Below are positions 28,603 to 61,377 of a stretch of 64,000 nucleotides of DNA, piece by piece (the stretch's first letter is position 1; each line of letters begins with the position of its first letter). The DNA is taken from IMG/VR virus record IMGVR_UViG_3300029258_003221, positions 170,632 to 234,631 of that record; one strand, 5' to 3'. Under the pieces are notes generated by a model that saw nothing but the letters and a program-made list of their open reading frames with translations, did not search any database and had not been told where the DNA came from. The position numbers and the translations under genes were made by a program.

Positions 28603-28810
28603 CTCCAGAGACTTTCTTTGTAACCAATCTCAATCCAATCAATGCGACTGAAAGAAAGATTAGAAAAGAGTCAAAGAGAAAAACAAAACCCAAAATCGCT
28701 TTATCTTGTCGAGATTGAATTTTGATCTCTTCGACATTGACCTGCATATAAAAAAGCAAGCCAATCATAATGAACACGGAAATGCCCAGAATGGCAAACA
28801 GTTGTTTCAT
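28577..28810 (-). CDS. two-TM membrane protein
   Basis: two hydrophobic segments. Confidence 0.75.
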   Translation of the reverse strand: MKQLFAILGISVFIMIGLLFYMQVNVEEIKIQSRQDKAILGFVFLFDSFLIFLSVALIGLRLVTKKVSGGDFDDSQH

Positions 28811-41981: not shown

Positions 41982-42857
41982 CTAAGCAGCGACAGTCAGG
42001 AATTTCTTGACTGACTCTTCCATACGTGCAGCACGCTTTTCTGGCTCTTCGCCAATAGCGAACTCAAAGTTCTGACACACGATGGTGATTTTGACAAATC
42101 GCAGCAGGTTTCGCAACTGTTCGACATTCTCACAGTAGCTGCAAGCTCGCTCCATGAAACCGTCCTTGATTTTCAGGACTTTATCCATAACGAGCAACCC
42201 ACGCTCTTCATCTGTGATAGGAGGCAGACTGACATTCTTTCTGCCTTTAGCGGGACTGGCATTAAAGTAACCAAGCAGTTTTTTTGCAAGGCCCTTCTCT
42301 GTCTCATCTTTGCTGTAGTAAAGCTTGTCGAAGCTTTTGATGAGATTAAGCTGACTTTCAATGATGAACTCAGCATCGCTTTCATCACCAGATTCAGCAA
42401 CGATCTTTTCAGCAGTCTTCTGAGAAAGACCCACAAGATCACTGGTGAGAGCAGCAATCACCACACTTTCAGGTGTTTCATCTTCCTGAAGTTCATCAGG
42501 TTTAGGGATGAAAGACGCAAGAGCGTTAGTTCGAAATTTCACCATGAAGAGAAACGACATGTCTCTCACCACGGCAGAATCTTTTTGAACGACAATTCGA
42601 GGATTTGGTGGAAGCTGTTTGTCATTCCACATAGCCTGCGTCCATCTTTCAAAAAGCTTGTTGCCAACAACAGCTTTCTTTTGCTTGACCACAGGATCAA
42701 TGACTTCTGCCACTGCTGCCGAACTGATCAGATCCCTGACATCATCAATCAATTCTGTGTCTGGGTTCCAAACAGTCTCGTTCTTCTTTTTAACGTCTGA
42801 AGACTTCTTCTTTGTTGCTTTGGAAGCAACCTGTTGCAGCAAATCCGGCTTTGCCAT
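41982..42857 (-). CDS. hypothetical protein
   Basis: 291-aa ORF downstream of a promoter. Confidence 0.85.
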   Translation of the reverse strand: MAKPDLLQQVASKATKKKSSDVKKKNETVWNPDTELIDDVRDLISSAAVAEVIDPVVKQKKAVVGNKLFERWTQAMWNDKQLPPNPRIVVQKDSAVVRDMSFLFMVKFRTNALASFIPKPDELQEDETPESVVIAALTSDLVGLSQKTAEKIVAESGDESDAEFIIESQLNLIKSFDKLYYSKDETEKGLAKKLLGYFNASPAKGRKNVSLPPITDEERGLLVMDKVLKIKDGFMERACSYCENVEQLRNLLRFVKITIVCQNFEFAIGEEPEKRAARMEESVKKFLTVAA

Positions 42858-43427: not shown

Positions 43428-45128
43428 TTAAGCAGCACCGAAACAACGAGTCACAGTCATGTCTTTAGACTGCAAATGGTGCTTTTCTGCAAAGTCATGT
43501 AGGTCGTAAGCGTGATTCAGTCCCTCCTGCTCTTTGTAGGCTTCCTGAACAGCTTGTCGGAAGTCCATGATGTCCACACCAGTTGATGTGCCTTCAAGAA
43601 CATCCCGTTTCAAAGCAATCATCTTGGCACTTTCTGAAATCTGCTTCAGCATAGCACCATTGATCGTATCGGCAAATGAGAAGTCATGTTCATTGTTGAT
43701 ACGATACAACAATCGACTTCTACTAAAGATATCAGCAACTGTTACTGCTAATACCTGCTTCTTATCACCTTTGAACGGTGTATTAGAAGTATGAATCGCC
43801 ATTATGTCAAGAGCAGCATCTTCATCAGGACGATCAATTTTGATGTGATGAGAAATTCTTTCAGCACGAATCACTGCCGGGTCCAAAATATCGATTCTAT
43901 TCGTCATCAAAATGACAATTGGATTTTCTTTTGTTTGCTCTTCGTCCACGCCATCCATCTCACCCAAAAACATGGGGACCAATGTGTCGGCAATATCACT
44001 GGAACGACGTGTACCACGTTGTGGCATAATTGCATCAGCTTCATCAATGGCCAACAAAGCTGGATAACCATGTTGCCTGTAATGTTCACGTCCTCTGGCA
44101 AACAATCCACGAATTTCACCTTCAGAATTCCCCACATACATGTCAAGGATTTCCGGGCCTTTGACAAACAGATAACCTGTATCGATCACCTCTTTGCCAT
44201 GCACTTCAGCAATCAACCAAGCACAAAGACGAGCCAATAAAGTTTTTCCACAACCCGGTGGCCCATGCAAAACTGCACCTTTGGGTCTGCTCATCCCATA
44301 ATGTTCAAAAAGCTCAGGCTGAGAATAAGGCAACTCCAAAAACTCTCTGATCATTTCTTTTGGACGTTCCAGCCCACCAATACTGTCCCAATTGATGTTT
44401 GACTGATGGCCAAGCGTATATCTTTTTCGATTGTCTTTATTGAGCTTTTTGACAACCATCAAATAACCAGAGTCAACAGCTATTTTATCTCCATCTTTCA
44501 GTTCAATACCTTGTGGATTATACACAAGGTAGCGTTCACCTTTGTTGTTTATTTCGACACACTGATCAACCACGCCTTCAACAGTGCATATGGGACCACT
44601 GTTGAGATCATATTCAGCATGACCCACAATTTGGTTTTTTTCGTTTACTTTAACGAAATCACCGGGAGACAGGTCATAAGCAGGATGTTCCAACTCCCAA
44701 AGTTTCCCATCAACAATAGCAACAACAAACCGCCCATCTGATTTTTCTGCTAGATGAATTTGCTGAGGCTCATTGAGACCTATGCTGTATTGACCTGAGC
44801 CATCTTCAAAAGCAACAGTGGCTATTCCATCATTAACCTCTGTAATAGAACCAACTTTTTTGTAGTTGGGAGCTTCCTCATCGATAACCATCACTCGATC
44901 ATCTGGTTGGAAGGCAGTAACATCTACTTTGTTGTGAACAGTATGAACAACAGCGTAGCGATAAGGAACAGAACCCAATTGTTGGATAACTTCATGTTGT
45001 TCAATTAGCTTATCTTGCTGTTCCTTCAAAATAGCTCTTAAAGAGGCGACTTCTTCATTATGACGCCTTCGTTCGCTGGAGAGCTTTCTCTGTACTTCAC
45101 GTTCAATATGTTGCTGTTGTTCGTCCAT
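43428..45128 (-). CDS. ARC/Mpa/PAN-like proteasomal AAA+ ATPase
   Basis: N-terminal coiled coil + OB-like region; GPPGCGKT, VKGPEILDMYVG, IDEAD, TNRIDILDPAVIR; C-terminus CFGAA lacks HbYX. Confidence 0.85.
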   Translation of the reverse strand: MDEQQQHIEREVQRKLSSERRRHNEEVASLRAILKEQQDKLIEQHEVIQQLGSVPYRYAVVHTVHNKVDVTAFQPDDRVMVIDEEAPNYKKVGSITEVNDGIATVAFEDGSGQYSIGLNEPQQIHLAEKSDGRFVVAIVDGKLWELEHPAYDLSPGDFVKVNEKNQIVGHAEYDLNSGPICTVEGVVDQCVEINNKGERYLVYNPQGIELKDGDKIAVDSGYLMVVKKLNKDNRKRYTLGHQSNINWDSIGGLERPKEMIREFLELPYSQPELFEHYGMSRPKGAVLHGPPGCGKTLLARLCAWLIAEVHGKEVIDTGYLFVKGPEILDMYVGNSEGEIRGLFARGREHYRQHGYPALLAIDEADAIMPQRGTRRSSDIADTLVPMFLGEMDGVDEEQTKENPIVILMTNRIDILDPAVIRAERISHHIKIDRPDEDAALDIMAIHTSNTPFKGDKKQVLAVTVADIFSRSRLLYRINNEHDFSFADTINGAMLKQISESAKMIALKRDVLEGTSTGVDIMDFRQAVQEAYKEQEGLNHAYDLHDFAEKHHLQSKDMTVTRCFGAA

Positions 45129-45169
45129 CCTTGGACTCCTTTAGAGAGTGGACTTTATTAGACAACAGC

Positions 45170-45198
45170 ACTCTAAGTTTGATACTTAAAAAGGTCAA
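45170..45198 (-). promoter_or_regulatory. sigma70-like promoter
   Basis: TTGACC-17-TAGAGT. Confidence 0.65.
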
Positions 45199-45212
45199 GA
45201 TGAATCTTAGAA

Positions 45213-45249
45213 CAAAAAAAGGGAATAGGCCAAAAACCTATTCCCTTTT
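45213..45249 (-). terminator. intrinsic terminator (bidirectional-looking)
   Basis: AAAAGGGAATAGG/CCTATTCCCTTTT. Confidence 0.85.
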
Positions 45250-45265
45250 GAAAACTCATTGAAAT

Positions 45266-46000
45266 TTACGGCTCGGTGATTTTTACACCATTGTCCGTAT
45301 TTTCAATATTGAATGAATCACCAGTCATATTGGCTTCATGGAGAGTCCTACGAGCAAGTCGAAGATCACCATTTCTTTCAATCTTTCGCTGATCAATAGA
45401 AAGGTAACCCTGAAGCCCACTTGTGATGTTTGTCAGCAGGATTTCACCGTCGTTGATCACAACATTGACAGTGTCATTTGGCTCAATTTCAGCTTCACGC
45501 AGAAATTGCGTTCGGATGAACAAACCACCTCGGCAATTGGTCTTATAGGTGCCATCATCCTGCTCACCGCCAACATCATCTGCATCGTCATCAGAACCAA
45601 GCGGGCTGCTACCGCTGATTCCTGCTGGTGCAGACGTACAAACTGTCGGTGAGGAAGTTTGAGCTGCGACAGGTGATGAAGTTGATTGACCTTTGGAGTA
45701 TGAATCGGCCATTGGCTCATACTGTGAAAGATCATAGCCATTTGGGTGATAAACAAGGACTTGCGTGCCATTATGCAGCGAAGTCAGTGTTTTGTCCCAA
45801 TCACCGAAATCATCACAAAGTTCAATGAGACTGGGAATTTCATGAATCCCCTGACGATTGGGACCATGACGCATTTGAACACCTTCCCGACGACGAGTCT
45901 CAACAGTGAGATCGTAACCACTGAAAGGTCTGCCCTGCTCAACAAAGGCATCGATTGTTTTTTCGTACAAAGCTTCAATATTTGAATCTAAACGGCACAT
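45266..46000 (-). CDS. protein with two C-terminal AbrB/SpoVT-like modules
   Basis: RGGLFIRTQFLREAEIEPNDTVNV and NGDLRLARRTLHEANM swapped-hairpin-like repeats. Confidence 0.55.
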   Translation of the reverse strand: MCRLDSNIEALYEKTIDAFVEQGRPFSGYDLTVETRRREGVQMRHGPNRQGIHEIPSLIELCDDFGDWDKTLTSLHNGTQVLVYHPNGYDLSQYEPMADSYSKGQSTSSPVAAQTSSPTVCTSAPAGISGSSPLGSDDDADDVGGEQDDGTYKTNCRGGLFIRTQFLREAEIEPNDTVNVVINDGEILLTNITSGLQGYLSIDQRKIERNGDLRLARRTLHEANMTGDSFNIENTDNGVKITEP

Positions 46001-46066
46001 TTGGTTTCCTCCATTAGAGTTTCTTTGTTATCGACAAGAGCAGGCAATTTCTGTAGGACTTCTTAC

Positions 46067-46097
46067 ATTCTACGACCAAAAAATTAAATTGTAAAGC
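46067..46097 (-). promoter_or_regulatory. sigma70-like promoter GCTTTACA-N15-CGTAGAAT
   Basis: TTTACA-17-TAGAAT. Confidence 0.8.
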
Positions 46098-46106
46098 AAC
46101 ATAGAT

Positions 46107-46379
46107 TCATTTAGATGATTCTACAACAAACTGGAGAGCATCTAACGCCTTTTGTTTGTTGCCTTCACAAACCTCAATTAACCGTTCTGCCGCTTTAATT
46201 CGTCGATTATGGGGCGTTGCACCCACCCCTCTCATTTTACTCCAAGCAACCTGAAAAGCTCGTTTACGTCCTATAAACTGAGGGTATGTTTGCACAAGGC
46301 AATTCCAAGCATCATTGGCATGAATAATTGATTTGTCTTTAAGGATATTTCTCAACCCTTCAGCAACACTCTTTGCCAT
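46107..46379 (-). CDS. small basic hypothetical protein
   Basis: start set at ATG 46379. Confidence 0.7.
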   Translation of the reverse strand: MAKSVAEGLRNILKDKSIIHANDAWNCLVQTYPQFIGRKRAFQVAWSKMRGVGATPHNRRIKAAERLIEVCEGNKQKALDALQFVVESSK

Positions 46380-46927
46380 CACTGAATCCAATTCATTTGA
46401 TTCACTAAATCATCAAGTTCCATACCAGCAGTTGCTTTGAAGTTATTCTGACGAAAAGCCTCAAAACCGCTATTTGGACCATAGTTCATGATATGAACAA
46501 GCACACTCCCCGAATTCTCTGAATCAATGTGTTCGCCGGTCAAAGAACACATGCGAATTCTCTTGAGTTCTTCGTATGGAACATGAATCCCAAAACAATG
46601 CTGACACATCTTACGCTCTTTGGTGCTGTAAGAGCCAACAAGATGCACTTTGTCGATAAGGTGCTGAATGTTATAATTGACTTCCTCTTGCACTTCCCGC
46701 ACCAAAGCTTCCCGCAAAGTCTCTTCCCCATCGACTTTGCCACCGGGAAAACCAAACGTGCCATCCCACCGCAACTGCATCATCACCGTGGGAATAACTG
46801 TATTTCGGTGGTTCTCAGAAACATCTTTGTAGTTCCTGTAAGGTTTGCCATCTTCTGCATAGAAGGCTGCAAAGACACAATGAAATGCACCGGGAACCAT
46901 TTCTTCATTGCCAATCCTTATGTACAT
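46379..46927 (-). CDS. Nudix hydrolase, NUDT16/U8-decapping-like
   Basis: MMQLRWDGTFGFPGG (NUDT16 has MQMRFDGxxGFPGG); intact Nudix box GKVDGEETLREALVREVQEEV. Confidence 0.85.
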   Translation of the reverse strand: MYIRIGNEEMVPGAFHCVFAAFYAEDGKPYRNYKDVSENHRNTVIPTVMMQLRWDGTFGFPGGKVDGEETLREALVREVQEEVNYNIQHLIDKVHLVGSYSTKERKMCQHCFGIHVPYEELKRIRMCSLTGEHIDSENSGSVLVHIMNYGPNSGFEAFRQNNFKATAGMELDDLVNQMNWIQ

Positions 46928-47289
46928 CAGAAATTTGCTCCGCTACGGTGAAGTTTGTCGTAGAGATCGTTCCAGTCAATTTTATGAAACCGCTCCAAAT
47001 GATCGACAACACCATCACCCAATTTTTCCATATCGGGCATTTCACCATTGCGAATTCGATAAGCAGGTGTAGCCACAAGGCTGCAAACTTCAGCAAGTGC
47101 CGTTTGCTGATAAGAAGACAGGATCAATTGTCCAGCCAGAGCCATTTTGATCTCACGAGCAAAAGCGTTCAACACAGCCATTGCCGTGCGGAGTTCTTGT
47201 GCCTCCATCTCACCTGCATGAAGCAAGACCTCCTGCTCATTGGTCCATCGTTCAATGACTTTGTCGATCTCAGTTATGTCTTTTGACAT
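46927..47289 (-). CDS. hypothetical protein
   Basis: 120-aa ORF. Confidence 0.7.
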   Translation of the reverse strand: MSKDITEIDKVIERWTNEQEVLLHAGEMEAQELRTAMAVLNAFAREIKMALAGQLILSSYQQTALAEVCSLVATPAYRIRNGEMPDMEKLGDGVVDHLERFHKIDWNDLYDKLHRSGANF

Positions 47290-47361
47290 CGAAGCACCTG
47301 TAGAAAAGATTGACGGGGTGTTGGGGTTTTTTAGTTACACAAGCGAAGCAGCAACCCCTAA

Positions 47362-47757
47362 CTAAAAACTACTCTGATTAGTCAAACCCGCCAATCTCAA
47401 AGTTTCATTGATTTGAAAAAAGCTGTTTCTGAAATTGATTGACTCTATGGGAAATGCCAACTCTCTCAAATCGATACCGACTGTTTTCTTATCTTGTGAG
47501 ATTGACACTTTCCGAAAAACAAGATGCAACTCAGTTTCCTGTGGCAAACAGGCCACAACTCCACGAGGTGGTTTTTTGAGAAAACCTAAGAACAATCCAC
47601 GAAATGTCACAGTCTTTGAATCATCAAAACCAAACTGTTCTCTAAACCATGGGATGATCGTATTCTCTTCGTTGACAACTTCAAACTCAGCCCACTTGTT
47701 GATGTACTTCTTATAATGACCATATAGCCAACCAAGAGATGGAGCATTAAAAGTCAT
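47362..47757 (-). CDS. hypothetical protein
   Basis: 131-aa ORF. Confidence 0.7.
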   Translation of the reverse strand: MTFNAPSLGWLYGHYKKYINKWAEFEVVNEENTIIPWFREQFGFDDSKTVTFRGLFLGFLKKPPRGVVACLPQETELHLVFRKVSISQDKKTVGIDLRELAFPIESINFRNSFFQINETLRLAGLTNQSSF

Positions 47758-47978
47758 TCGGCGTTTAACTTTCTACTTGTCCAATCATGGAGCCAAAAGG
47801 TAAATCGATGAGGAAATAGACCAATACACATGTGTGCAAAACAGTTGTGAAACAACCACCAACAGTGGTGTTGGATCAGTGGAAACCGTTTCCCTTTGGC
47901 TCTGAATTTGTCGATACGTTTGTAGAAACGGCCCCAACTGCCGAGTTCTTCCGCTTCTTCTTCCTCAAACCCAAACAT
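47754..47978 (-). CDS. hypothetical protein
   Basis: 74-aa ORF. Confidence 0.7.
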   Translation of the reverse strand: MFGFEEEEAEELGSWGRFYKRIDKFRAKGKRFPLIQHHCWWLFHNCFAHMCIGLFPHRFTFWLHDWTSRKLNAE

Positions 47979-48156
47979 TGATTTTTCCCTTCACCGATTT
48001 TCCTGATTGCAATCGACTTTCGAGTCGCTTGACAACACAAGTGCCACAAAGTGGACCACCATCTGATGTTTTGATTCTATTCCATGTCTCATCAGAAACA
48101 ACAACGCTGACTTTGTAAGTCTTGCCACAGTTCTCGCATCGATGATCACTCATCAA
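47965..48156 (-). CDS. small zinc-finger protein
   Basis: CENC...LCGTC. Confidence 0.7.
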   Translation of the reverse strand: MMSDHRCENCGKTYKVSVVVSDETWNRIKTSDGGPLCGTCVVKRLESRLQSGKSVKGKINVWV

Positions 48157-49809
48157 TTATCTCCAAGAAACTTCTGCAAGATATTTGATCATGTGACGAC
48201 CCTTTTTGTAGATAATGAACTCGTTATTGGCAAGGTAGCCACCACTCATGCCGCCCTTACCAAACACGTGGTGAGTTCCTTTGCTGGCTGTCATACTTCT
48301 GCCGCCACCTGTACCTGCAATATCCGGCATTCCAAGACAAACATCACAAAGCATCATAAAAGAATGACGACCAGAAATTCCACCATCACCAGCATACATT
48401 GAACCCGATGCTGAACAATACTGCGAAGATTTCTGCCAGTCGTCAGCAAAGTAAATTCCCTGACCAAATGCAGCACCATTTGTAGCTACATTGACAAGTT
48501 CCTGTGGGAATCGGAAATTCTCTCTCAAGATACCAGCAACATTTACCGAACGAGTTCCGTGGAACAAAGCGGCAGTATTGGTTTCCCAATACTTTCTCCG
48601 TTGAGCTGGAGTCAAATCAGGACGCTTTTTGTCCTGATGTAACGGACGATCACCATCAGAAAGCTTTTTCATTTCTGATTTAATTTGATCCTGTGACTTT
48701 GTGAAAGTCTTGTCATCGCCATGACGAAGGACTTCCCAAAGATGATGAACGGTCAAAGAACCACGACCACCATATCTATTTTTGGTAGCTTCTTTCCACC
48801 AAGCATAAAGATACTTGCCAATTTCTGAAGTCTTAGAAATATGCTTCATATCCAAAGGCATTCCCGCCATCGGATCATTACCATCATCTTCAATGGTGAA
48901 ATCGCCAGTCTTCAAAGCAGATTCAAAAGCATCAATTTCAAGTTCCCACTCATTGATGTTATTCGCTGAAAGAATCCATGAGCTTTCATGTGCATTGAGC
49001 GGTTTGATTTTAGGAATCAACCCATACAAAGCATAAGTGATCTGCTTCAATTCCTGATCATTGACCTGATTGTCAACATCACCACCAACTTTGCCAACAC
49101 GTTTAAGTGCAGCCTGAAGCAAATCTCGACCCTGATCCAGTGCTTTCTGTGACGGAACAGTGCCTCCTTGAAGTGTGGTACGAGCGTGCTGAATCGTACC
49201 GCCAAGAAGATCACGCATTAGTTTTGAGGTTTCAATATCGCAGCGATTTTTGCTCTTGGCTTTGGTTTTCTTTTTAGAACCGTTAGATGAAGCAGAAGAT
49301 TGAGTAGAACCATCGTCAGCAGAAAGATTACGGGCATCTGGAAGACCCGTATCACGTGAGACGAGCGGCCTCACAGCGTACAGATCTTTCAGCTTACCCT
49401 TGCTATCTTTCTTTGGCACGAACATATCGATGCCGCCAACTTTATCCCATACACCTCGGGATGTATTCTTGGATTTACACTGCTTGACAAAAGCAGCCAT
49501 TGCCTCATCTTTGCTGGAGCATTGCGTAAACTGGAATGTAGGATTATTTCCCACACGACCAAACTCAACATAAAGATACCAGTCCCCATCTGGATCACTC
49601 ACCACAGCAGCGTGATAAAATTTATTTGAATCAACCTTACGAGCGCTGCCATCTTTGGAAACACCCTTTTCTTCCTGCTGAAAACAGCCCATATCGGCCA
49701 GCATACAGCCTTCAAACTTTGTATCTTCAGTGGCGACAGGACCATGACACTTAAAGTCATCAGGACCAAGACCTTTTGGGTATTCTTTTTTGTCGAGTTT
49801 AGTAGCCAT
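48157..49809 (-). CDS. poly(ADP-ribose) polymerase-like protein (WGR + helical + ART domain)
   Basis: WGR-like YVEFGRVG; helical domain ...LYGLIP; H-Y-E triad LFHGT / FGQGIYFA / NNEFIIY. Confidence 0.9.
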   Translation of the reverse strand: MATKLDKKEYPKGLGPDDFKCHGPVATEDTKFEGCMLADMGCFQQEEKGVSKDGSARKVDSNKFYHAAVVSDPDGDWYLYVEFGRVGNNPTFQFTQCSSKDEAMAAFVKQCKSKNTSRGVWDKVGGIDMFVPKKDSKGKLKDLYAVRPLVSRDTGLPDARNLSADDGSTQSSASSNGSKKKTKAKSKNRCDIETSKLMRDLLGGTIQHARTTLQGGTVPSQKALDQGRDLLQAALKRVGKVGGDVDNQVNDQELKQITYALYGLIPKIKPLNAHESSWILSANNINEWELEIDAFESALKTGDFTIEDDGNDPMAGMPLDMKHISKTSEIGKYLYAWWKEATKNRYGGRGSLTVHHLWEVLRHGDDKTFTKSQDQIKSEMKKLSDGDRPLHQDKKRPDLTPAQRRKYWETNTAALFHGTRSVNVAGILRENFRFPQELVNVATNGAAFGQGIYFADDWQKSSQYCSASGSMYAGDGGISGRHSFMMLCDVCLGMPDIAGTGGGRSMTASKGTHHVFGKGGMSGGYLANNEFIIYKKGRHMIKYLAEVSWR

Positions 49810-49866
49810 AGTAATTCTCCTTTGTCGCCATTATCGAATGATCAGGTGTCAAACTTTACTGGTTTA

Positions 49867-50334
49867 TCAAGAAACCCGATCAACCGCCTGCTCAATAAGT
49901 GCTTTTAAAGTGTTACAAGGTGTCTCGTTCGTTCTTTTTTCATACATGCGATCAAGATACCTTGTTTTAGGAGCACCATCAGGGCGACCATAAACAAATC
50001 GACCACAATTCAAATACATGCCAAATTCCACATTGGTAGTGAAAGCTGGCATGTTTTCCAATTCTCGTGGCACCCAAGCAGCAATGCAGCCTCTTTGAGA
50101 AGACAAAACCAGTGCCGCATCTTCCCAATCAACTTGGTCAATGTAAGTTTGAACAACCATTCCAAAAACCTCTGGGACAAACACGGTTCCCTTGAACCCC
50201 GTTTCTTCCAAAAGTTTAATTGCCTCTGGTCTCCATGATGGCACGCTTGGGCTTCTTGGTGTTGGCCCTACCAAGAAGATACAAGGCATCTGTTCGTCGT
50301 CAACCAAATCGCCGGGACAGATAATTCTCATCAT
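49867..50334 (-). CDS. nucleoside 2-deoxyribosyltransferase-like (NDT/TIR-like fold) protein
   Basis: IFLVGPTPR...SWRPEA...VFVPE...QVDWE...WVPR...TTNVEFG. Confidence 0.8.
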   Translation of the reverse strand: MMRIICPGDLVDDEQMPCIFLVGPTPRSPSVPSWRPEAIKLLEETGFKGTVFVPEVFGMVVQTYIDQVDWEDAALVLSSQRGCIAAWVPRELENMPAFTTNVEFGMYLNCGRFVYGRPDGAPKTRYLDRMYEKRTNETPCNTLKALIEQAVDRVS

Positions 50335-50957
50335 GATCCACCACCCACATTCCCATCGACATCAAGGTAACGACCGGGTTTGCCACGTTTGCCCTTGAAG
50401 TGTTCATTGATTTCACGATAAGCCACCCAAACATCCTGATCGTAGAATTCAGTTATCGCTTTGTGAAAGAAGGGAACAGCTTTGTTTAACACATGTGGTC
50501 GAAAGTGGTTGACATCCACTCCTACGTTGAATGAGTTCAATTGAACTTTCCAAGCTGAATGAATGTGTCCAACGAGATTGAAACGGTCGGCTCGGCCCTG
50601 TGTTGGATAGTGCGTAATCCAACAAGGAACACCTTCTACATCAATTTCAAGACCATCGCCTTCAGCAACGATTTCATCGAAATATTTTGATAGCTGTTCG
50701 TCGGTAAACACTCGGTCATGATTTCCTCGAAAGAGGATTTTCCGACCATTGAAATGACTCACCTGTGAGAGAAATTCAGGCGTGTTTAGATTTACAGCAT
50801 CGCCAACGACGTAGACTGTATCATCAGGTTCAACGAGTTCATTGTGCAGGAAAATAAATTCATCAACCATGTGCTGGGCACTTACAAAACCCGGACGCCC
50901 CATGATTTCAAATCGATCTTCGCCAAGATGCCAGTCAGAAGTAATGAAATCTGTCAT
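50331..50957 (-). CDS. calcineurin-like metallophosphoesterase
   Basis: SDWH, VGD, GNHD, THYP, GHIH, NVGVD. Confidence 0.9.
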   Translation of the reverse strand: MTDFITSDWHLGEDRFEIMGRPGFVSAQHMVDEFIFLHNELVEPDDTVYVVGDAVNLNTPEFLSQVSHFNGRKILFRGNHDRVFTDEQLSKYFDEIVAEGDGLEIDVEGVPCWITHYPTQGRADRFNLVGHIHSAWKVQLNSFNVGVDVNHFRPHVLNKAVPFFHKAITEFYDQDVWVAYREINEHFKGKRGKPGRYLDVDGNVGGGS

Positions 50958-50958
50958 A

Positions 50959-51165
50959 TCAACCCCGATAATCCCATTCCCATCGTTCATCTACGAGTTG
51001 ATTGCCATCCTTGCGACAGGAGTAACAAGCCATGGCACCATAGTCTCCTTTGAGACTTTTGGCTTCTTTGTTGCTGTCGGCAGTGTCGAAAACAGATGCA
51101 TCTTCTGTCCCCTGATCACCGCAAGCACGACTGTCATACAGAATGTATGTTCTTTCTTCAGGCAT
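50959..51165 (-). CDS. hypothetical protein
   Basis: start set at ATG 51165. Confidence 0.65.
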   Translation of the reverse strand: MPEERTYILYDSRACGDQGTEDASVFDTADSNKEAKSLKGDYGAMACYSCRKDGNQLVDERWEWDYRG

Positions 51166-51388
51166 GTTTTGATCTCGGTTCCTCAAACTTGTTGCGAAAC
51201 TCTTCATACTCACGGTAGAGCGTTTCGTGAATTTCATCGTGCCTATCGGTGTTGCGATAGACATCCATATACCATTCGTCAATCTTCTCTGGAGTGGGGT
51301 CAAACTCCGAATCGAGATTGTAGAAAATCCACCATGTGACCAGATCACGTATCTGTGGCCAAAGCTTCATCTTTGCTGCTACTGCCAT
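51158..51388 (-). CDS. hypothetical protein
   Basis: 76-aa ORF with AGGAG SD. Confidence 0.7.
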   Translation of the reverse strand: MAVAAKMKLWPQIRDLVTWWIFYNLDSEFDPTPEKIDEWYMDVYRNTDRHDEIHETLYREYEEFRNKFEEPRSKHA

Positions 51389-51410
51389 GATATCTCCTAC
51401 AAACTTGAAG

Positions 51411-51791
51411 TTAAATCCAAGAACATTTTACGAACGAAAAGTTGGCTTGTAAAGCAAACTGAAGCGTCACATTCCATTTTTCATCACATGAAGCCTCATG
51501 AGTGATTCGCAGATGAAGATCGCTGCCTCTTTTGTGAACTACCCCGACCCTAAAGAGGTCGGGGTAGTTCACCCAATCCGGCCTCATATCAGGCTTGCCA
51601 TCTTCAATCCATAATGACAAAGCAAAACAAATGCCTTCACCAAAATCACCATCGCCACCAAATTTGATATCGAATTACGGCTCAAGATATCTGGCTAATG
51701 CATAAGCAATGTGCATTGCTTCTTCATTGTGTTCAACTCCATTTTCCCAACGATCTTCAATGCGTTTAGCATAAGATTCTTTTTTAGCCAT
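51411..51791 (-). pseudogene. 126-codon gene with an internal TAA
   Basis: MAKKESY...YLEP*FDIKFGGDGDFGE...; TAA at 51675-51677 is in frame. Confidence 0.65.
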
Positions 51792-52377
51792 TATGATACC
51801 AATCAGTGTATGCTTTGATTGTTGTGTTCTTTGTGTTTCTTACAGAAGAAAGTCCTCTACATGGCATTTCATCATCATTATGACAAGATAAAGAAACGCC
51901 TTCTTCATCGAACAGTTTGATCATATTTCTTGCAGATGGCAAACAACCTAAATTTTGAGCCACTGTCGCATCTTTGTTTTCACCATCTCTAAAAGGACAA
52001 GCTTGACATCGCCTTAATGAAAATCCCTTGGATTCAATACGTTCAATAATAAGACGACGAGCTTCTGTGGTTGGTGACCAATTGTTCATTTGTTTATCAG
52101 GAATTTCACGAAAAGCACCGCCCATCCATGTTACATTGAAATCACGATCTTCACATTCAAGAAAAATTTCTAAGTAACGTGTGAGCAAGTAACCAATTTT
52201 ATCGTAAAAAAACCGTACATGTCCGGTGCCAAGCGTGAAATCCTTTGGAATTTTTCCTTCAAGGACTGCACGTCCTGAACGCACAGCATTTGGAATACGA
52301 ACAATTTCACGATGTTCTGCAAGAAGCAATTTATCTGGAAGTTCAAAAGGATGAACCCCAGCATTGATGCGTGTCAT
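51784..52377 (-). CDS. denV: pyrimidine-dimer DNA glycosylase (T4 endonuclease V-like) with Cys-rich C-terminal extension
   Basis: MTRIN...LLAEHREIVRI...FTLGTGHVRFFYDK; catalytic Thr2 and Glu retained. Confidence 0.9.
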   Translation of the reverse strand: MTRINAGVHPFELPDKLLLAEHREIVRIPNAVRSGRAVLEGKIPKDFTLGTGHVRFFYDKIGYLLTRYLEIFLECEDRDFNVTWMGGAFREIPDKQMNNWSPTTEARRLIIERIESKGFSLRRCQACPFRDGENKDATVAQNLGCLPSARNMIKLFDEEGVSLSCHNDDEMPCRGLSSVRNTKNTTIKAYTDWYHNG

Positions 52378-52387
52378 GACTTCCCTT

Positions 52388-52657
52388 TCATGTCACAGAG
52401 AGAATTTCCTCAATCGCCTGTTTGTGGTTCATTGCATTTTTCCACTCAGTGCGAACGAACTCTTTGTTTTCTTCTCGTTTAGTGGGTGTCACATTTTGCC
52501 GACCTCCACAAAAAGACCAGCCACACCCTCCACAAATCCATGTGGAGGGGTGCCAGCCATATACTTTCACCAAAAATCGCCTTTTCTTTCTACATGTCGT
52601 GCATTTGCGAACAGCACGAGCCACAAAAGATTTTGGGCGATAAATGTAAAGATTCAT
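52388..52657 (-). CDS. small zinc-finger protein
   Basis: CTTC...CGGCG. Confidence 0.7.
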   Translation of the reverse strand: MNLYIYRPKSFVARAVRKCTTCRKKRRFLVKVYGWHPSTWICGGCGWSFCGGRQNVTPTKREENKEFVRTEWKNAMNHKQAIEEILSVT

Positions 52658-52929
52658 GCCTGTTCCTCGATAACCAAAGATTCGGATTGCTCTTCGGCCT
52701 CATTTGCCCAAGAATGTAAATTCTCAGCAAAATTTCTAGCTGTCTCAGTTGTCATCTGAAAACGAATTGTATTCGTGCGTTCAACATTCACCATGCTTCC
52801 ACCATGAAATTCCATTGCTTTATCAAATGTCGTGAGCACAGCTTCAATTTCTGGAACAGTCTTTTTGCCTTCTTTCGTCTCAATCATTGTGTGACGAATA
52901 TTTCTGGCAACAGTCATCAAAGATTCCAT
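52654..52929 (-). CDS. hypothetical protein
   Basis: 91-aa ORF. Confidence 0.75.
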   Translation of the reverse strand: MESLMTVARNIRHTMIETKEGKKTVPEIEAVLTTFDKAMEFHGGSMVNVERTNTIRFQMTTETARNFAENLHSWANEAEEQSESLVIEEQA

Positions 52930-52939
52930 TAGTCGTCTT

Positions 52940-53227
52940 TCATTCTTCAGTTTCGTCTTTGTCGTCTTCCAGTGGAATGTATTTGCTCAAGTTATACTTG
53001 CGATATGCAAAACAAAAGATCACTGCACCGATAATCGAAAACAGCAATCCTGCTGGACCAAATGAACCACCAGCAATCAACCAGTTAATCATACCACCTA
53101 TGAAACTTCCTGCAACCCCAATCACCAGAGTAGCAATTAAGCCACCCGGCTCAGGCCCCGGATGTATAGCTTTCCCAATCAGGCCCGCTACGAAACCAAT
53201 CACCAAAATCCAAATCAAATAAAACAT
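52940..53227 (-). CDS. GlsB/YeaQ/YmgE (transglycosylase-associated) membrane protein
   Basis: IWILVIGFVAGLIGKAIHPG...TLVIGVAGSFIGG...SIIGAVI. Confidence 0.85.
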   Translation of the reverse strand: MFYLIWILVIGFVAGLIGKAIHPGPEPGGLIATLVIGVAGSFIGGMINWLIAGGSFGPAGLLFSIIGAVIFCFAYRKYNLSKYIPLEDDKDETEE

Positions 53228-53319
53228 ATTAACTCTCCTTGTTGTTTTGAACCACTTTATTTTTGGTCCATGTATATAGATCTTTCGCCACCGCACAGCA
53301 TACAACGAGAACCATGCCT

Positions 53320-55606: not shown

Positions 55607-56722
55607 TCAGGACTTCAAAGAAATTTGAACCAATTCATTTGGCGATCTGGCATTTTCCACTGGAGGAGGAACGCAATTGAATGGCTTTGGGTAAGTAAGA
55701 GGAACATTCAAATCAATTGCTCTCTGCATCGCCTTATCTGCATTTCGTTCGAAAATCTCCACATTTTTATGGTTCAAAAGAATCTCGCCAAGAGAAACAT
55801 TGCCATTCTGATCATGTGTTGGAAGCATCACCATCTTGTCCACACCCAAATCAGCGGCAGTTTCCACCATATCTGTCATCTCGGAAACATTCAACAAATT
55901 GATGTTATTCCAAATTGTAGTGATATGTCTCTCTTTGCCTCCATGTTCTTCACGAAGTTCCATATAGTTTTTGATATTTTTGATGATGTTGTTGTAAGCA
56001 TCAATTCGACGTATCTTAATGAAAGTATCTGGTGTCGCTGCATCAATTGAAAAACTGATATCTGACCAACCAACTTCTGCAAAGAATCGTTCATTTATTT
56101 TTGGAATCAACAGAGTTGCATTAGTGTTAGTTTCAAACCTGATTTGATCACGATAACGTGGAAACTCCAACCATTCAAAAACCTGAAAAACCTGATCTTT
56201 CCAAAATGGCTCAGCGATACCCAAAACACACAGGTGCTTAAGAAAAGGCATAATCGGCCTTGCTTTATCACAAAGAAAACCAGTTAAATCTTCTTGCTTA
56301 GGTTTTCGATGGTTTCTGATGCACATAATGCAAGCCGGTTTTTCATCTGATGGAATCAACCCACCGATGTTGCAATGTGAATCGGGAAGACAAATTTCAA
56401 GATATGTTGGATAAGTAAACTTCTTGTAAGCTTTGAATGGCACTGGTTCCTTTTCTCTAACAAGAAAAGGACAAACATTCCAACTCTTGCAGATTGAATG
56501 CAATTCACCTTTCATTGTAGATTCACGAATGGCCTGAGCACGAGGGCTGTTCCAAATGTCTAAAATTTCATCGTCTATCAAACTACCAAGTTGTTCCAAT
56601 TGATAGCAACACGTTGAAACATTCCCATCTGCATTCAATATGCATTTCGTAAAAGGCAACCCACAGAAAGCTTGATGCTCAACAATATCTTCATGATGTA
56701 CTGGGTTTATTTTGAAGGTCAT
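55607..56722 (-). CDS. SPASM + radical SAM protein
   Basis: N-terminal C..PF...DGNV..CC...GSL...IWNS; cluster motif C-X13-CIMC; GIAEP. Confidence 0.85.
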   Translation of the reverse strand: MTFKINPVHHEDIVEHQAFCGLPFTKCILNADGNVSTCCYQLEQLGSLIDDEILDIWNSPRAQAIRESTMKGELHSICKSWNVCPFLVREKEPVPFKAYKKFTYPTYLEICLPDSHCNIGGLIPSDEKPACIMCIRNHRKPKQEDLTGFLCDKARPIMPFLKHLCVLGIAEPFWKDQVFQVFEWLEFPRYRDQIRFETNTNATLLIPKINERFFAEVGWSDISFSIDAATPDTFIKIRRIDAYNNIIKNIKNYMELREEHGGKERHITTIWNNINLLNVSEMTDMVETAADLGVDKMVMLPTHDQNGNVSLGEILLNHKNVEIFERNADKAMQRAIDLNVPLTYPKPFNCVPPPVENARSPNELVQISLKS

Positions 56723-61295: not shown

Positions 61296-61329
61296 GTAAC
61301 CTCCTTTTGGGAAACCCCTGTATGCCTAC

Positions 61330-61360
61330 ATTTTACGTCAAAAATGGGTCTCTGTAAAGC
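61330..61360 (-). promoter_or_regulatory. sigma70-like promoter GCTTTACA-N15-CGTAAAAT
   Basis: TTTACA-17-TAAAAT upstream of clpX. Confidence 0.75.
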
Positions 61361-61377
61361 AGATTCTAAAATCCGAA

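What the first reader, a model, noticed from the sequence alone, without database searches (positions are those of the whole stretch)
46379..50957. Phage WGR-PARP with NUDT16-like Nudix and macrodomain: a complete ADP-ribose writer/eraser set
Seen: a 550-aa protein with a WGR-like domain, helical regulatory region and intact H-Y-E triad. A NUDT16-like Nudix lies 1.2 kb downstream and a macrodomain is at 28807..29337. Established: H-Y-E ARTs such as PARP1/3 and the Herpetosiphon PARP are DNA-break-activated polymerases, and NUDT16 and macrodomains remove ADP-ribose. Typical phage ARTs (Alt/Mod) are a different, R-S-E class. Inference: the phage runs a reversible, DNA-end-sensing PARylation circuit for genome protection, NAD+ manipulation or defence jamming.
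Basis: partly seen in the sequence, partly recalled or inferred. Interest (0 to 1): 0.75.

Follow-up and report, generated by a model that had tools for sequence, protein, structure and literature searches.

The report
Huge-phage PARP enzyme with shifting eraser genes

Summary
ORF 48157..49809(-) is a 550-aa WGR / helical-domain / ART protein with an invariant H-Y-E triad. ORF 46379..46927(-) is a NUDT16-like Nudix with an intact Nudix box. ORF 28807..29337(-) is a TARG1/DarG/SCO6735-class macrodomain.

The "complete writer/eraser set" reading is only partly supported. This Nudix was found in 0 of 22 PARP-bearing relatives. It does occur in 91 cultured phage records, while the PARP matched only 6 records in that collection. 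The macro family was found in 4 of 22 relatives and in 438 phage records. Neither PARG nor ARH is present in the 234-kb fragment.

The PARP belongs to a deep clade confined to huge phages (contigs up to about 630 kb) and Planctomycetota. Its recurrent neighbours are:
- a wHTH + MraZ/AbrB-like DNA-binding protein (here 45266..46000), in 42 of 64 loci
- an ADP-ribosylglycohydrolase, 2.4-7.5 kb downstream in 8 of 23 phage records
- a NUDT5-like Nudix
- RNA-ligase-family genes

In Planctomycetota the PARP sits inside type XIII retron operons, flanked by ARH and Macro genes.

Most likely this is a nucleic-acid-break-activated, reversible ADP-ribosylation module. A role in phage-host conflict is the main rival. 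It is a new variant of a known kind.

The parts
48157..49809 (-). WGR-HD-ART PARP, 550 aa (catalytic H417, Y453, E530)
   Evidence: Pfam PARP and WGR. AF2 model plus Foldseek to PARP1/PARP2 WGR-HD-CAT. Triad invariant in 61 homologues.
49330..49809 (-). WGR domain, aa 1-160 (motif F83-G84-R85; N62 and K63 invariant)
   Evidence: Pfam WGR hit at 60-115. Beta-rich domain with pLDDT above 90. R85, N62 and K63 invariant; position 83 is W, F or Y.
49237..49329 (-). Disordered Lys/Ser-rich linker, aa 161-191
   Evidence: pLDDT below 50 at residues 167-182. The sequence is variable but the composition is 21% Lys across 40 homologues.
48907..49236 (-). Helical (autoinhibitory-type) domain, aa 192-301
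   Evidence: Helices at 192-301. The HD+ART part superposes on PARP1 catalytic fragments at TM 0.70-0.74 by target.
48160..48855 (-). ART catalytic domain, aa 319-550
   Evidence: Pfam PF00644 at 395-548. PDB alignment to the PARP1 motifs HGS and GIYFAD.
47965..48156 (-). 63-aa CxxC...CxxC zinc-ribbon protein that abuts the PARP stop codon
   Evidence: phrog_6053, E 1e-7. Zero-nt gap to the PARP. Not found next to the PARP in relatives.
46379..46927 (-). NUDT16-like Nudix hydrolase, 182 aa, intact Nudix box 63-82
   Evidence: PF22327, E 2.6e-23. Human NUDT16, E 2e-7. Nudix box confirmed. Absent from 22 relatives.
45266..46000 (-). c3: PARP-linked DNA-binding protein (winged-helix N-domain, low-complexity linker, tandem AbrB/MraZ-like C-domain)
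   Evidence: Clusters with neighbours of the PARP in 42 of 64 loci, 31 planctomycete and 11 viral. AF2 pLDDT 80.9. Foldseek to PadR-type wHTH and MraZ. F26, H45 and H53 invariant.
45217..45249 (-). Intrinsic terminator (15-bp stem plus T run) that closes the PARP...c3 unit
   Evidence: It is the only long-stem terminator-like site between 43000 and 54500.
49867..50334 (-). Nucleoside 2-deoxyribosyltransferase-like (PF15891 family) protein, 155 aa
   Evidence: Weak Pfam hit. Atlas feature score 0.97 to PF15891 phage clusters, which are often fused to Metallophos_2. The same pair sits next to the PARP in L022.
50331..50990 (-). Calcineurin-like metallophosphoesterase, 219 aa, catalytic motifs intact
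   Evidence: phrog_547, E 2e-30. Motifs DxH, GD, GNHD and GHxH present. Homologues within 10 kb of the PARP in 14 of 26 phage loci.
51784..52377 (-). T4 endonuclease V-type pyrimidine-dimer DNA glycosylase, in the same variable insert
   Evidence: PF03013, E 4.7e-10.
28807..29337 (-). TARG1/DarG/SCO6735-class macrodomain (separate locus, 18.8 kb away)
   Evidence: PDB 5e3b, E 1e-17; 2fg1, E 4e-18. phrog_335. Within 4 kb of a PARP in L023 and in Klebsiella phage FBKp34.
43428..45128 (-). Mpa/ARC-like AAA ATPase: the conserved flank of the PARP block
   Evidence: TIGR03689, E 2.5e-82. Syntenic in L002, L004, L008, L024 and L025. Present without the PARP in L079 and L080.

Best explanation
The 550-aa protein is a genuine clade-1 (PARP1/2/3-type) ADP-ribosyltransferase. 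It belongs to an old family shared by marine and sediment huge phages and Planctomycetota.

Proposed mechanism:
1. The WGR domain, helped by the Lys-rich disordered linker, docks on a nick or a 5'-phosphorylated nucleic-acid end.
2. This releases the helical domain that otherwise blocks the NAD+ site.
3. The H-Y-E centre then transfers ADP-ribose, as monomer or polymer (not decidable here), to itself, to the co-transcribed DNA-binding partner c3, and/or to the terminal phosphate of the break.
4. The mark is reversible.

In relatives an ARH glycohydrolase and a NUDT5-like ADP-ribose pyrophosphatase lie in the same gene block. In this genome that slot is empty, and a NUDT16-like Nudix lies in the same transcription unit (MPE-NDT-PARP-...-Nudix-...-c3, closed by a terminator). 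That Nudix plausibly trims ADP-ribose or recycles ADPr.

The distant macrodomain is a general ADPr-DNA / Glu-Asp-ADPr hydrolase and is only loosely tied to the PARP.

Shown: fold, domain order, catalytic and WGR residues, gene linkage and phyletic pattern.
Inferred: activation by breaks, the targets, chain length, and which enzyme erases what.
For: Identity and architecture:
- Pfam, PDB, AF2 and Foldseek all agree.
- H417, Y453, Y464, E530 and the WGR residues R85, N62 and K63 are invariant in 61 sequences, which shows purifying selection on both catalysis and the DNA-contact motif.

Linkage to ADPr erasers and recyclers in relatives:
- ARH (PF03747, E 1e-45) lies 2.4-7.5 kb downstream on the same strand in 8 of 23 phage records. 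ARG domains occur in about 5% of jumbo phages in general (PMC9503650).
- A NUDT5-like Nudix lies in the block in 5 loci.
- All 8 records that are at least 90% complete have a macro or an ARH.
- An SCO6735-like macro lies 3.4-3.8 kb from a PARP in L023 and in Klebsiella phage FBKp34.
- In the planctomycete operons the PARP is flanked by ARH and Macro.

Linkage to break processing:
- Rnl2-like and Rnl1-like ligases sit in the block.
- NAD-dependent LigA lies directly upstream of the PARP in L059; the same-cluster ORF holds that place in L064.
- A DenV-type glycosylase and a weakly PdeM-like phosphoesterase lie in this window.

Single transcription unit:
- Gaps between genes run from -32 to +106 nt, and one strong terminator follows c3.

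Precedent from the literature:
- Bacterial WGR-PARPs (Herpetosiphon, C. difficile) are reported active, and the Herpetosiphon enzyme needs DNA (PMC4245714, PMC5966428).
- PARP1-3 ADP-ribosylate phosphorylated DNA ends, and ARH3, TARG1, MacroD2 and PARG reverse this (PMC5725667).
Against: - There is no biochemical evidence for any member of this clade.
- The PARP is not universal in the phage group. G024 (459 kb, 91% complete) keeps the flanking genes but has no PARP, so it is accessory cargo in a variable slot, as conflict genes often are.
- The planctomycete homologues sit in retron (defence-type) operons.
- This Nudix and this macro family mostly occur in phages where no PARP was detected.
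- Human NUDT16 cleaved DNA-end ADPr only very weakly (PMC5725667).
- No ARH or PARG is found in this (44% complete) fragment.
- No RNA-level evidence of expression was listed.
Confidence: 0.5

Rival explanations
1. Conflict module. PARP-c3(-ARH) is the sensor/effector arm of an immune-type system: in Planctomycetota it is attached to a type XIII retron. The phage would carry an RT-less copy for one of three purposes:
- to jam or decoy the host system
- to exclude competing phages by sensing incoming DNA ends
- to drain or redirect NAD+

On this reading the Nudix and macro are stand-alone counter-defence enzymes, acting against ADPr-derived signals and DarT-type DNA ADP-ribosylation.
For: - PADLOC hits in L047: HEAT-ARM_XIII E 3e-160, SWIM_XIII E 1e-183, RT_XIII E 2e-154, immediately upstream of the PARP and flanked by ARH and Macro. 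The arrangement recurs in at least 14 planctomycete loci.
- The retron RT carries the same N-terminal domain as phage c3.
- The PARP block lies in a variable insert that is absent from a 91%-complete relative.
- The SCO6735 class efficiently reverses DarT damage (PMC9411070).
- Phage Macro and Nudix domains are argued to target soluble ADPr signals (PMC9503650).
- The Nudix gives a weak hit to PADLOC candidate PDC-S07.
Against: - Phage and planctomycete PARPs form cleanly separated, deep groups, with only 3 label changes on the tree. This is not recent capture of host defence genes.
- Phage loci keep synteny with ligases, ARH and a NUDT5-like Nudix, which looks more like metabolism or repair.
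- No RT is found in 5 phage records.
- Type XIII retrons were reported to track 16S and may have non-defence roles (PMC7736814).
- No defence activity has been shown for type XIII retrons with a PARP.
Confidence: 0.27
2. Host-takeover ART. The PARP works like T4 Alt/Mod and modifies host proteins (RNA polymerase, translation factors) independently of DNA breaks. WGR and HD would be inherited baggage.
For: - Iyer et al. suggest that jumbo-phage PARTs may act like other phage ARTs, with chains in place of single units (PMC7824862).
- The gene lies among host-interaction-type cargo: C39 peptidase, ClpX-like protein, sigma-like factor and ion channel.
Against: - Strict conservation of the WGR contact residues and of the helical domain across 61 sequences argues that regulation by nucleic acid is retained.
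- The same enzyme is chromosomal in Planctomycetota, where host takeover makes no sense.
- There is no virion-packaging fusion or context.
Confidence: 0.1
3. RNA/DNA end-capping for repair. The enzyme mono-ADP-ribosylates 5'- or 3'-phosphorylated RNA or DNA ends. This would protect them or channel them to the adjacent Rnl1/Rnl2-type ligases, in a phage tRNA/nucleic-acid repair pathway. ARH, macro and Nudix would remove the cap. This is a special case of the best explanation, with nucleic acid rather than protein as the main target.
For: - Two RNA-ligase families lie in the relatives' PARP block.
- The homologous Nudix in Serratia phage BF lies in a Sir2 / RNA-ligase / NAMPT neighbourhood, which has been predicted to be an NAD-dependent RNA-repair system (PMC9503650).
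- PARP1-3 modify DNA-end phosphates, and TARG1, ARH3 and MacroD2 reverse this (PMC5725667).
Against: - This window and fragment have no RNA-ligase-family gene.
- Human NUDT16 is poor on DNA-end ADPr (PMC5725667).
- There is no direct evidence.
Confidence: 0.13

Closest known systems
Human PARP1/PARP2/PARP3 (DNA-dependent, clade-1 PARPs)
   Same: - Collinear WGR / helical domain / ART, with H-Y-E, the second Tyr and the GR of the WGR motif.
- The best structural matches are PARP1 and PARP2 bound to DNA breaks.
   Different: - Only 16-20% identity.
- No zinc fingers or BRCT domain.
- F replaces W in the WGR motif here (most family members have W).
- Asn replaces PARP1 Tyr986 two residues before the catalytic Glu; this mapping rests on my own recollection of the PARP1 sequence.
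- A Lys-rich linker replaces the PARP2/3 N-terminal tail.
- Activity, DNA dependence and chain length are untested.
Bacterial PARPs (Herpetosiphon aurantiacus HaPARP, Clostridioides difficile CD160 CdPARP)
   Same: - A minimal WGR-(HD)-CAT architecture in which Pfam often misses the helical domain although models show it (PMC5966428).
- HaPARP is reported to need DNA and to make PAR, and it has a PARG partner (PMC4245714, PMC5966428).
   Different: - This clade is restricted to Planctomycetota and huge phages. I saw neither among the six phyla and twelve orders surveyed in those papers.
- Its partners are c3 and ARH rather than PARG.
- I made no direct sequence comparison with HaPARP or CdPARP, because no reference sequence was available in the tools.
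PARPs of cultured phages (Klebsiella phage vB_KpM_FBKp34 QQV91759.1; Stenotrophomonas phages CM1/RAS14; Aeromonas Aeh1 and Cellulophaga phi4:1 in Perina 2014)
   Same: - Phage-encoded, and annotated with WGR + regulatory + catalytic domains.
- An SCO6735-like macro ('putative phosphatase') lies 2.4 kb upstream of the FBKp34 PARP.
   Different: - Only about 32% identity, confined mainly to the ART domain.
- It falls with the distant outgroup sequences on a very long branch in the tree.
- 428 aa, with no c3 or ARH neighbours.
Type XIII retron (Mx162/Mx65 type; RT + SWIM/DEDE protein + WGR-like HEAT/ARM protein)
   Same: - The planctomycete orthologues of this PARP lie inside such operons.
- The retron RT there shares phage c3's N-terminal domain.
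- The retron accessory protein itself carries a WGR-like domain (PMC7736814).
   Different: - The phage has no RT, SWIM or HEAT/ARM gene. It is not a retron.
- An association between PARP and type XIII retrons is not described in the papers I found.
NUDT16 / NUDT5 Nudix hydrolases and TARG1/DarG/SCO6735 macrodomains
   Same: - The Nudix passes the Nudt16-like Pfam threshold and has the Nudix box.
- The macro aligns end to end with SCO6735 and BT1257.
   Different: - Relatives carry a NUDT5-like Nudix at the PARP block in place of the NUDT16-like one.
- Both families are widespread in phages where no PARP was detected.
- SCO6735 prefers DarT-modified DNA (PMC9411070).
T4 Alt/ModA/ModB and DarT/DarG
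   Same: NAD+-dependent ADP-ribosylation in phage-host biology. DarTG is a writer plus a macro eraser.
   Different: - Alt and Mod are R-S-E mono-ARTs without WGR or HD.
- DarT is a DNA-thymidine ART.
- No DarT-like gene was examined or seen here.

Membership tests
Clade-1 (DNA-dependent) PARPs | ART fold with the H-Y-E NAD+-binding/catalytic triad | tested here: met
   PF00644, E 2e-20. H417, Y453 and E530 invariant in 61 sequences. Foldseek to PARP1 CAT, TM 0.70-0.74 by target.
Clade-1 (DNA-dependent) PARPs | WGR domain N-terminal to the catalytic region, with conserved G-R | tested here: met
   PF05406, E 1e-9. F83-G84-R85 here; R invariant, and position 83 is W, F or Y across the family.
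Clade-1 (DNA-dependent) PARPs | Helical (PARP_reg/HD) subdomain between WGR and ART | tested here: met
   Not detected by Pfam. The AF2 model shows helices at 192-301, and the full-length superposition on PARP1/2 WGR-HD-CAT includes them.
Clade-1 (DNA-dependent) PARPs | Activation by DNA breaks | not testable with these tools
   Needs an enzyme assay with and without nicked or 5'-P DNA.
Clade-1 (DNA-dependent) PARPs | Synthesis of poly(ADP-ribose) rather than mono-ADPr | not testable with these tools
   H-Y-E is necessary but not sufficient: PARP3 is treated as a mono-ART (PMC5725667).
NUDT16-like Nudix (PF22327) | Score above the curated family threshold, plus the Nudix box GX5EX7REUXEE | tested here: met
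   83.2 bits against a cut-off of 27. Box at residues 63-82. Human NUDT16 is the best PDB hit.
NUDT16-like Nudix (PF22327) | Cleaves protein-linked PAR or MAR | not testable with these tools
   Substrate cannot be read from sequence. Alternatives for this family include IDP/dIDP, free ADPr and NAD-capped or m7G-capped RNA (my own knowledge of NUDT16).
TARG1/DarG/SCO6735 (ALC1-like) macrodomains | Macrodomain fold with both phosphate-binding loops; close similarity to SCO6735 and BT1257 | tested here: met
   5e3b, E 1e-17; 2fg1, E 4e-18, aligned over residues 20-192, including the NDxxxxGxGF and GxGLAGG loops.
Conserved PARP + this Nudix + this macro 'writer/eraser set' | Co-occurrence of the three genes in genomes that carry the PARP | tested here: not met
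   Nudix in 0 of 22 records; macro in 4 of 22. Both families are common in phages where no PARP was detected.
PARP + glycohydrolase pairing (any ARH or macro) | An ADPr glycohydrolase present in PARP-bearing genomes, preferentially nearby | tested here: met
   8 of 8 near-complete records have ARH and/or a macro. ARH lies 2.4-7.5 kb from the PARP in 8 records. No independent-contrast statistics were run.
Type XIII retron | Retron RT with SWIM and HEAT/ARM accessory genes | tested here: not met
   Present beside the planctomycete orthologues. No RVT_1 in this fragment or in 4 related phage records, and no such neighbours in phage loci.
T4 Alt/Mod-type phage ARTs | R-S-E catalytic motif, no WGR or HD | tested here: not met
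   H-Y-E triad and WGR/HD present.

The most novel reading that the evidence does not exclude
PARP-c3-ARH is an ancient prokaryotic DNA-sensing ADP-ribosylation signalling module. In Planctomycetota it is wired to a type XIII retron, with msDNA or phage DNA ends as the ligand of the WGR domain, to form a PARP-based immune or DNA-surveillance pathway. Huge phages carry an RT-less version as a counter-measure or for guarding their own genome. That would make it a prokaryotic and viral counterpart, possibly an antecedent, of eukaryotic PARP1-type break signalling, with c3 as a dedicated substrate or adaptor.
Probability: 0.2. Interest if true: 0.9.

Novelty: new variant of a known kind. Interest (0 to 1): 0.6.

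Why it matters
I found no report of a biochemically characterised phage WGR-PARP. In the literature I could search, prokaryotic PARPs are treated as sporadic imports from eukaryotes.

Here the enzyme defines a large, deep clade: more than 340 protein clusters were returned, and the 120 best hits all align at or near full length at 43% identity or more. The clade is confined to huge phages and one bacterial phylum. It has strictly conserved catalytic and DNA-contact residues, its own conserved DNA-binding partner, and recurrent ARH, Nudix and ligase neighbours. In the bacteria it is physically embedded in a retron operon.

That gives a tractable, minimal system of two or three genes, with an isolate available (Neorhodopirellula pilleata Pla100). 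It could be used to ask what DNA-sensing ADP-ribosylation does outside eukaryotes, whether retron msDNA can be a PARP ligand, and how huge phages use NAD+ chemistry.

For the finding as written, the correction matters. The Nudix and macro are lineage-specific additions, not the core of the system.

Tried and rejected
- Near-identical phage DNA: none in the phage collection.
- PARG (PF10021), NAMPT/NAPRTase (PF04095), RNA ligase (PF09414), ARH (PF03747) and RT (PF00078) in the window's own 234-kb record: none found. The record is only 44% complete, so absence is weak evidence.
- Pfam Macro does not detect the window's macrodomain. It gives only a weak second hit elsewhere in the record, at G000:C1:27719-27979, which I did not follow up.
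- "The Nudix is a conserved partner of the PARP": rejected.
- "The PARP is a universal core gene of this phage group": rejected. G024 keeps the flanks but has no PARP.
- "The phage captured the PARP recently from its host": not supported. The two groups are separate and deep.
- The opposite claim, that planctomycetes acquired it from phages, is suggested by outgroup rooting but is not established. Phage monophyly is not rejected (AU p = 0.40), and the outgroups are on long branches.
- Metallophosphoesterase identity: only weak similarity to PdeM (E 1e-5, below the cut-off) and to aq_1665. Its function stays open.
- c3 in sequence libraries: nothing in Pfam beyond a sub-threshold MazE hit, and nothing in NCBIfam or PADLOC. 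The fold assignment rests on an AF2 model and weak Foldseek E-values (0.01-0.1) with high probabilities.
- RNA-seq evidence: no RNA run was listed.
- Literature searches for phage PARP biochemistry, planctomycete PARP and a retron-PARP link returned nothing specific.

Full report
**Where the window lies**

The window is the last 64 kb of a 234,631-bp IMG/VR virus record that CheckV rates 44% complete. The full genome is therefore probably around 500 kb. GC content is 0.42-0.43. The stretch 46379..50990 occurs in sediment and seawater metagenome runs from at least five studies. No RNA run was listed. All genes near the finding are on the minus strand.

**Checking the observation**

PARP, ORF 48157..49809(-), 550 aa:
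- It passes the Pfam thresholds for the PARP catalytic domain (E 2e-20) and for WGR (E 1e-9).
- phmmer against PDB aligns it in order with the WGR, helical and catalytic parts of PARP1 constructs.
- I aligned 40 homologues (A1) and modelled the protein. The model has pLDDT 85.8 and pTM 0.85.
- Its layout is a beta-rich WGR domain (1-160), a disordered linker (about 165-190), a helical domain (192-301) and an ART domain (319-549).
- Foldseek returns PARP1 WGR-HD-CAT bound to a double-strand break (4dqy_C, TM 0.70 by target; also 7s6m and 8g0h) and PARP2/HPF1 on a break (6x0l) as the best full-length matches. PARP1 catalytic fragments match the HD+ART part at TM 0.70-0.74.
- H417, Y453 and E530, the second tyrosine Y464, and the WGR-region residues N62, K63 and R85 are invariant in all 61 full-length phage and planctomycete sequences. 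G84 is invariant except for one Ala.
- The "W" of the WGR motif is F here and W in most relatives.
- The linker varies in sequence but is consistently Lys-rich, at 21% K across 40 sequences.

Nudix, 46379..46927(-):
- It scores 83 bits on Pfam Nudt16-like, against a cut-off of 27.
- Human NUDT16 is its best solved relative.
- Its Nudix box is intact.

Macrodomain, 28807..29337(-):
- Pfam Macro does not detect it.
- It aligns over its whole length with SCO6735 (5e3b, E 1e-17) and BT1257 (2fg1).

**How common the PARP is**

- A word-indexed search of 5.8 billion proteins returned 346 relatives. The best 120 all have 43% identity or more, and nearly all align over the full length. Many sit on contigs of 345-634 kb.
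- An exhaustive HMMER scan of 1.84 billion cluster representatives gave 62 hits at E < 1e-30 and 1,194 at E < 1e-3.
- IMG/VR holds 25 loci, most on contigs of 100-572 kb. Eight of those records are at least 90% complete.
- Among GenBank phages, only the 595-kb uncultured phage LR756511 has a full-length relative (43% identity).
- Klebsiella and Stenotrophomonas phages match mainly in the ART domain, at about 32%.
- Klebsiella phage vB_KpM_FBKp34 is already annotated as carrying a WGR-regulatory-catalytic PARP.

The literature already records phage PARPs:
- Aeh1 and phi4:1 (PMC4245714).
- "A few jumbo phages" (PMC7824862).
- PART among the most frequent viral ART families (PMC9503650).
- "PARP1" in NAD-jumbo phages (PMC11662467).

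A phage PARP as such is therefore not new.

**The bacterial side**

A scan of one genome per prokaryote species found 44 loci. Almost all are from Planctomycetota:
- Families include Pirellulaceae, Gemmataceae, Isosphaeraceae and Planctomycetaceae.
- They include the isolate Neorhodopirellula pilleata Pla100.
- They include chromosomes of 7.8 and 8.3 Mb.
- These loci have GC 0.51-0.70 and share hardly any genes with the phage neighbourhoods.
- One exception, a 546-kb contig in a "Bacteriovoracaceae" MAG (L053, GC 0.38), shares 13 syntenic phage genes and is a misbinned huge phage.

I built a maximum-likelihood tree of 66 sequences:
- 31 of the 32 planctomycete proteins form one clade (SH-aLRT 99).
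- The window's protein falls in a five-member phage clade (support 100) with L002 (74% identity), L004, L024 and L022.
- Phage and planctomycete labels need only three changes on the tree.
- With distant outgroups the phage lineages are basal. However, an AU test does not reject phage monophyly (p = 0.40).
- The direction of transfer therefore stays open.
- The sharing suggests, but does not prove, that these phages infect Planctomycetota.

**What travels with the PARP**

I clustered all ORFs within 10 kb of the PARP in 26 phage loci and then in phage and bacterial loci together. Only two neighbour families are shared by the two sets.

First, c3, which here is 45266..46000:
- It is found beside the PARP in 42 of 64 loci (31 planctomycete, 11 viral).
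- It usually lies immediately or closely downstream of the PARP.
- Its model (pLDDT 80.9) has a winged-helix N-domain, a low-complexity linker, and a tandem AbrB/MraZ-like C-domain.
- Foldseek matches PadR-type regulators and MraZ with probabilities of 0.94-0.99 but weak E-values (Atlas leads).
- F26, H45 and H53 are invariant.
- In Pirellulaceae the same N-domain forms the N-terminus of a reverse transcriptase.
- Stand-alone c3 follows the PARP in L046, L052, L072 and L076 and precedes it in L039.

Second, an ADP-ribosylglycohydrolase (PF03747, E 1e-45):
- It is present in 9 of 23 PARP-bearing viral records.
- In 8 of these it lies 2.4-7.5 kb downstream on the same strand.
- About 5% of jumbo phages encode such a domain in general (PMC9503650).
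- Its closest solved relatives are MJ1187 and DraG.

Other recurrent phage neighbours:
- a calcineurin-like phosphoesterase, in 14 of 26 loci (here 50331..50990)
- an Rnl2-like ligase (PF09414) upstream of the PARP in 8 loci
- an Rnl1-like ligase (PF09511)
- a Nudix whose best solved relative is NUDT5, the ADP-sugar pyrophosphatase (E 2e-15), in 5 loci
- an Mpa/ARC-like AAA ATPase

- No homologue of the window's Nudix occurs in any of 22 PARP-bearing records, nor within 10 kb of the PARP in any locus.
- The same Nudix family is in 91 cultured phage records, mostly 350-kb enterobacterial jumbo phages. The PARP matched only 6 records in that collection.
- In Serratia phage BF the Nudix lies next to Sir2, an RNA ligase and NAMPT. 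Iyer et al. interpret that neighbourhood as NAD-dependent RNA repair (PMC9503650).
- The window's macro family is in 4 of 22 relatives and in 438 phage records, including T4-type Tk.4.
- The macro lies 3.4 kb from the PARP in L023 and 3.8 kb from it in Klebsiella phage FBKp34.
- The canonical Pfam Macro is in 6 of the 8 near-complete records, and the other two carry the SCO6735-like type. All eight therefore have a macrodomain, and four also have ARH.
- Microbial PARG is in one record only.
- The baseline for macrodomains in jumbo phages is 56% (PMC9503650). The macro signal alone is therefore weak, and the ARH signal is the strong one.
- SCO6735 itself removed DarT-made thymidine-ADPr from DNA thoroughly, but not the ADPr on automodified PARP1 E988Q, although it does act on Glu/Asp-linked ADPr (PMC9411070).
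- Human NUDT16 converts ADPr to phosphoribose and was poor on DNA-end ADPr (PMC5725667).

**Local anatomy in this genome**

- From 50990 down to 45266 the genes run: phosphoesterase, NDT-like protein, PARP, zinc-ribbon protein, three small ORFs, Nudix, a 94-aa ORF, and c3.
- Gaps between them range from -32 to +106 nt.
- A 15-bp-stem terminator follows at 45249..45217. This looks like one transcription unit that includes both the PARP and the Nudix.
- The phosphoesterase and NDT-like genes overlap by 4 nt. They correspond to a fusion common in phages, Metallophos_2 + PF15891. The same pair lies directly downstream of the PARP in L022.
- A T4 endonuclease V-type glycosylase lies 2 kb upstream.
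- Relatives with the order PARP-c3-AAA-ARH-c19 show that the ARH slot is empty here. The segment between AAA (43428..45128) and c19 (41982..42857) holds a 160-aa ORF with no Pfam hit.
- The small-ORF/Nudix segment is absent from the closest relative, L002.
- Two relatives (L079, L080) have the AAA gene directly after the TGA121 homologue. One of them, a 459-kb record that is 91% complete, has no PARP at all.
- The roughly 7.8 kb from 45129 to 52939 is therefore variable cargo between two conserved genes.

**The planctomycete operon**

- In L047 the order is ARH (400 aa), HEAT/ARM (617), SWIM (568), RT (643), PARP (529), Macro (178), all on one strand. The PARP and Macro genes overlap.
- PADLOC identifies three of these as type XIII retron components: HEAT-ARM_XIII (E 3e-160), SWIM_XIII (E 1e-183) and RT_XIII (E 2e-154).
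- The same arrangement recurs in at least 14 loci.
- Type XIII retrons (Mx162/Mx65 type) are known to have a SWIM/DEDE protein and a "WGR-like + HEAT/ARM" accessory protein, and to track 16S phylogeny (PMC7736814).
- They are known in Planctomycetota (PMC13712802).
- I found no mention of a PARP link.
- In L059 a NAD-dependent LigA with BRCT lies directly upstream of the PARP, and the same-cluster ORF holds that place in L064.
- The phages have no RT.

**Interpretation**

The fold, the conserved catalytic and WGR residues, and the recurrent linkage to ADPr hydrolases, an ADPr pyrophosphatase and ligases best fit a nucleic-acid-break-activated, reversible ADP-ribosylation module. On this reading c3 is a dedicated DNA-bound partner or substrate.

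In this genome the NUDT16-like Nudix is the only ADPr-processing gene in the PARP unit. It may stand in for the missing ARH/NUDT5 pair. The macrodomain is at most loosely connected.

The main rival is a conflict role. Three facts support it:
- the retron context in the bacterial relatives
- the variable-insert location in the phage
- the wide PARP-independent spread of the Nudix and macro families, for which counter-defence functions are proposed or shown

Sequence cannot decide whether the enzyme makes polymer or monomer, or whether its targets are proteins or nucleic-acid ends.

**Verdict**

The PARP is a new variant of a known kind. The added value lies in four points:
- the huge-phage/Planctomycetota clade
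- the c3 partner
- the ARH/NUDT5/ligase neighbourhood
- the retron XIII link

Noticed in passing
L047:681-10123 (Neorhodopirellula pilleata Pla100); same order in L041, L048-L052, L054, L055, L057, L060, L062, L066 and L068: Planctomycete operon ARH / HEAT-ARM_XIII / SWIM_XIII / RT_XIII / WGR-PARP / Macro. This is a type XIII retron with a PARP and two erasers attached. The papers I searched do not describe it.
   Followed up: partly
L059:977-5352; same-cluster ORFs in L064: An NAD-dependent DNA ligase (LigA with BRCT, 799 aa) lies directly upstream of the PARP in L059, and an ORF of the same cluster holds that place in L064.
   Followed up: no
window 43428..45128 (-): Phage-encoded AAA ATPase most similar to the Mpa/ARC proteasomal ATPase (TIGR03689, E 2.5e-82, below the cut-off), with an OB-domain hint. 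It is conserved beside the PARP block and is also present in relatives that lack the PARP.
   Followed up: partly
window 45129..52939: The whole stretch between the AAA gene and the Transgly_assoc-like gene (52940..53305) is missing in relatives L079 and L080, where the two genes are adjacent. It is a variable cargo slot holding the PARP, Nudix, DenV-like glycosylase, phosphoesterase and NDT-like genes.
   Followed up: yes
window 55607..58520 (-): Two SPASM / radical-SAM proteins with a sulfotransferase-like gene between them. This could be a peptide- or metabolite-modification cassette in a phage.
   Followed up: no
window 60033..63884 (-): A ClpX-like AAA protein with a zinc finger, an M50 peptidase, a family-2 glycosyltransferase and a voltage-gated-type ion channel in a row. 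This is unusual cellular-type cargo.
   Followed up: no
window 34090..34983 (-) and 37989..38654 (-): A sigma-70 region-2 protein and an HNH endonuclease lie downstream of the PARP block.
   Followed up: no
L053 (CALFYV010000090.1, 546 kb): A contig binned in a 'Bacteriovoracaceae' MAG is a huge phage: GC 0.38, with 13 genes syntenic with the phage PARP loci.
   Followed up: partly
G000:C1:27719-27979 (outside the window): A weak Pfam Macro hit (E 0.004, 284-aa ORF). It may be a second macrodomain in the same phage record.
   Followed up: no
L078:5007-5915 (Serratia phage BF gp113): The cultured-phage homologue of the window's Nudix is a longer fusion protein. It sits between Sir2 and a membrane protein, near NAMPT, a cytidyltransferase and an RNA ligase.
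   Followed up: partly
IMG/VR records G003, G005, G007 and G010: Records of 370-530 kb that carry the PARP are flagged 'provirus'. Given their synteny with the other huge-phage contigs, this may be a classification artefact.
   Followed up: no
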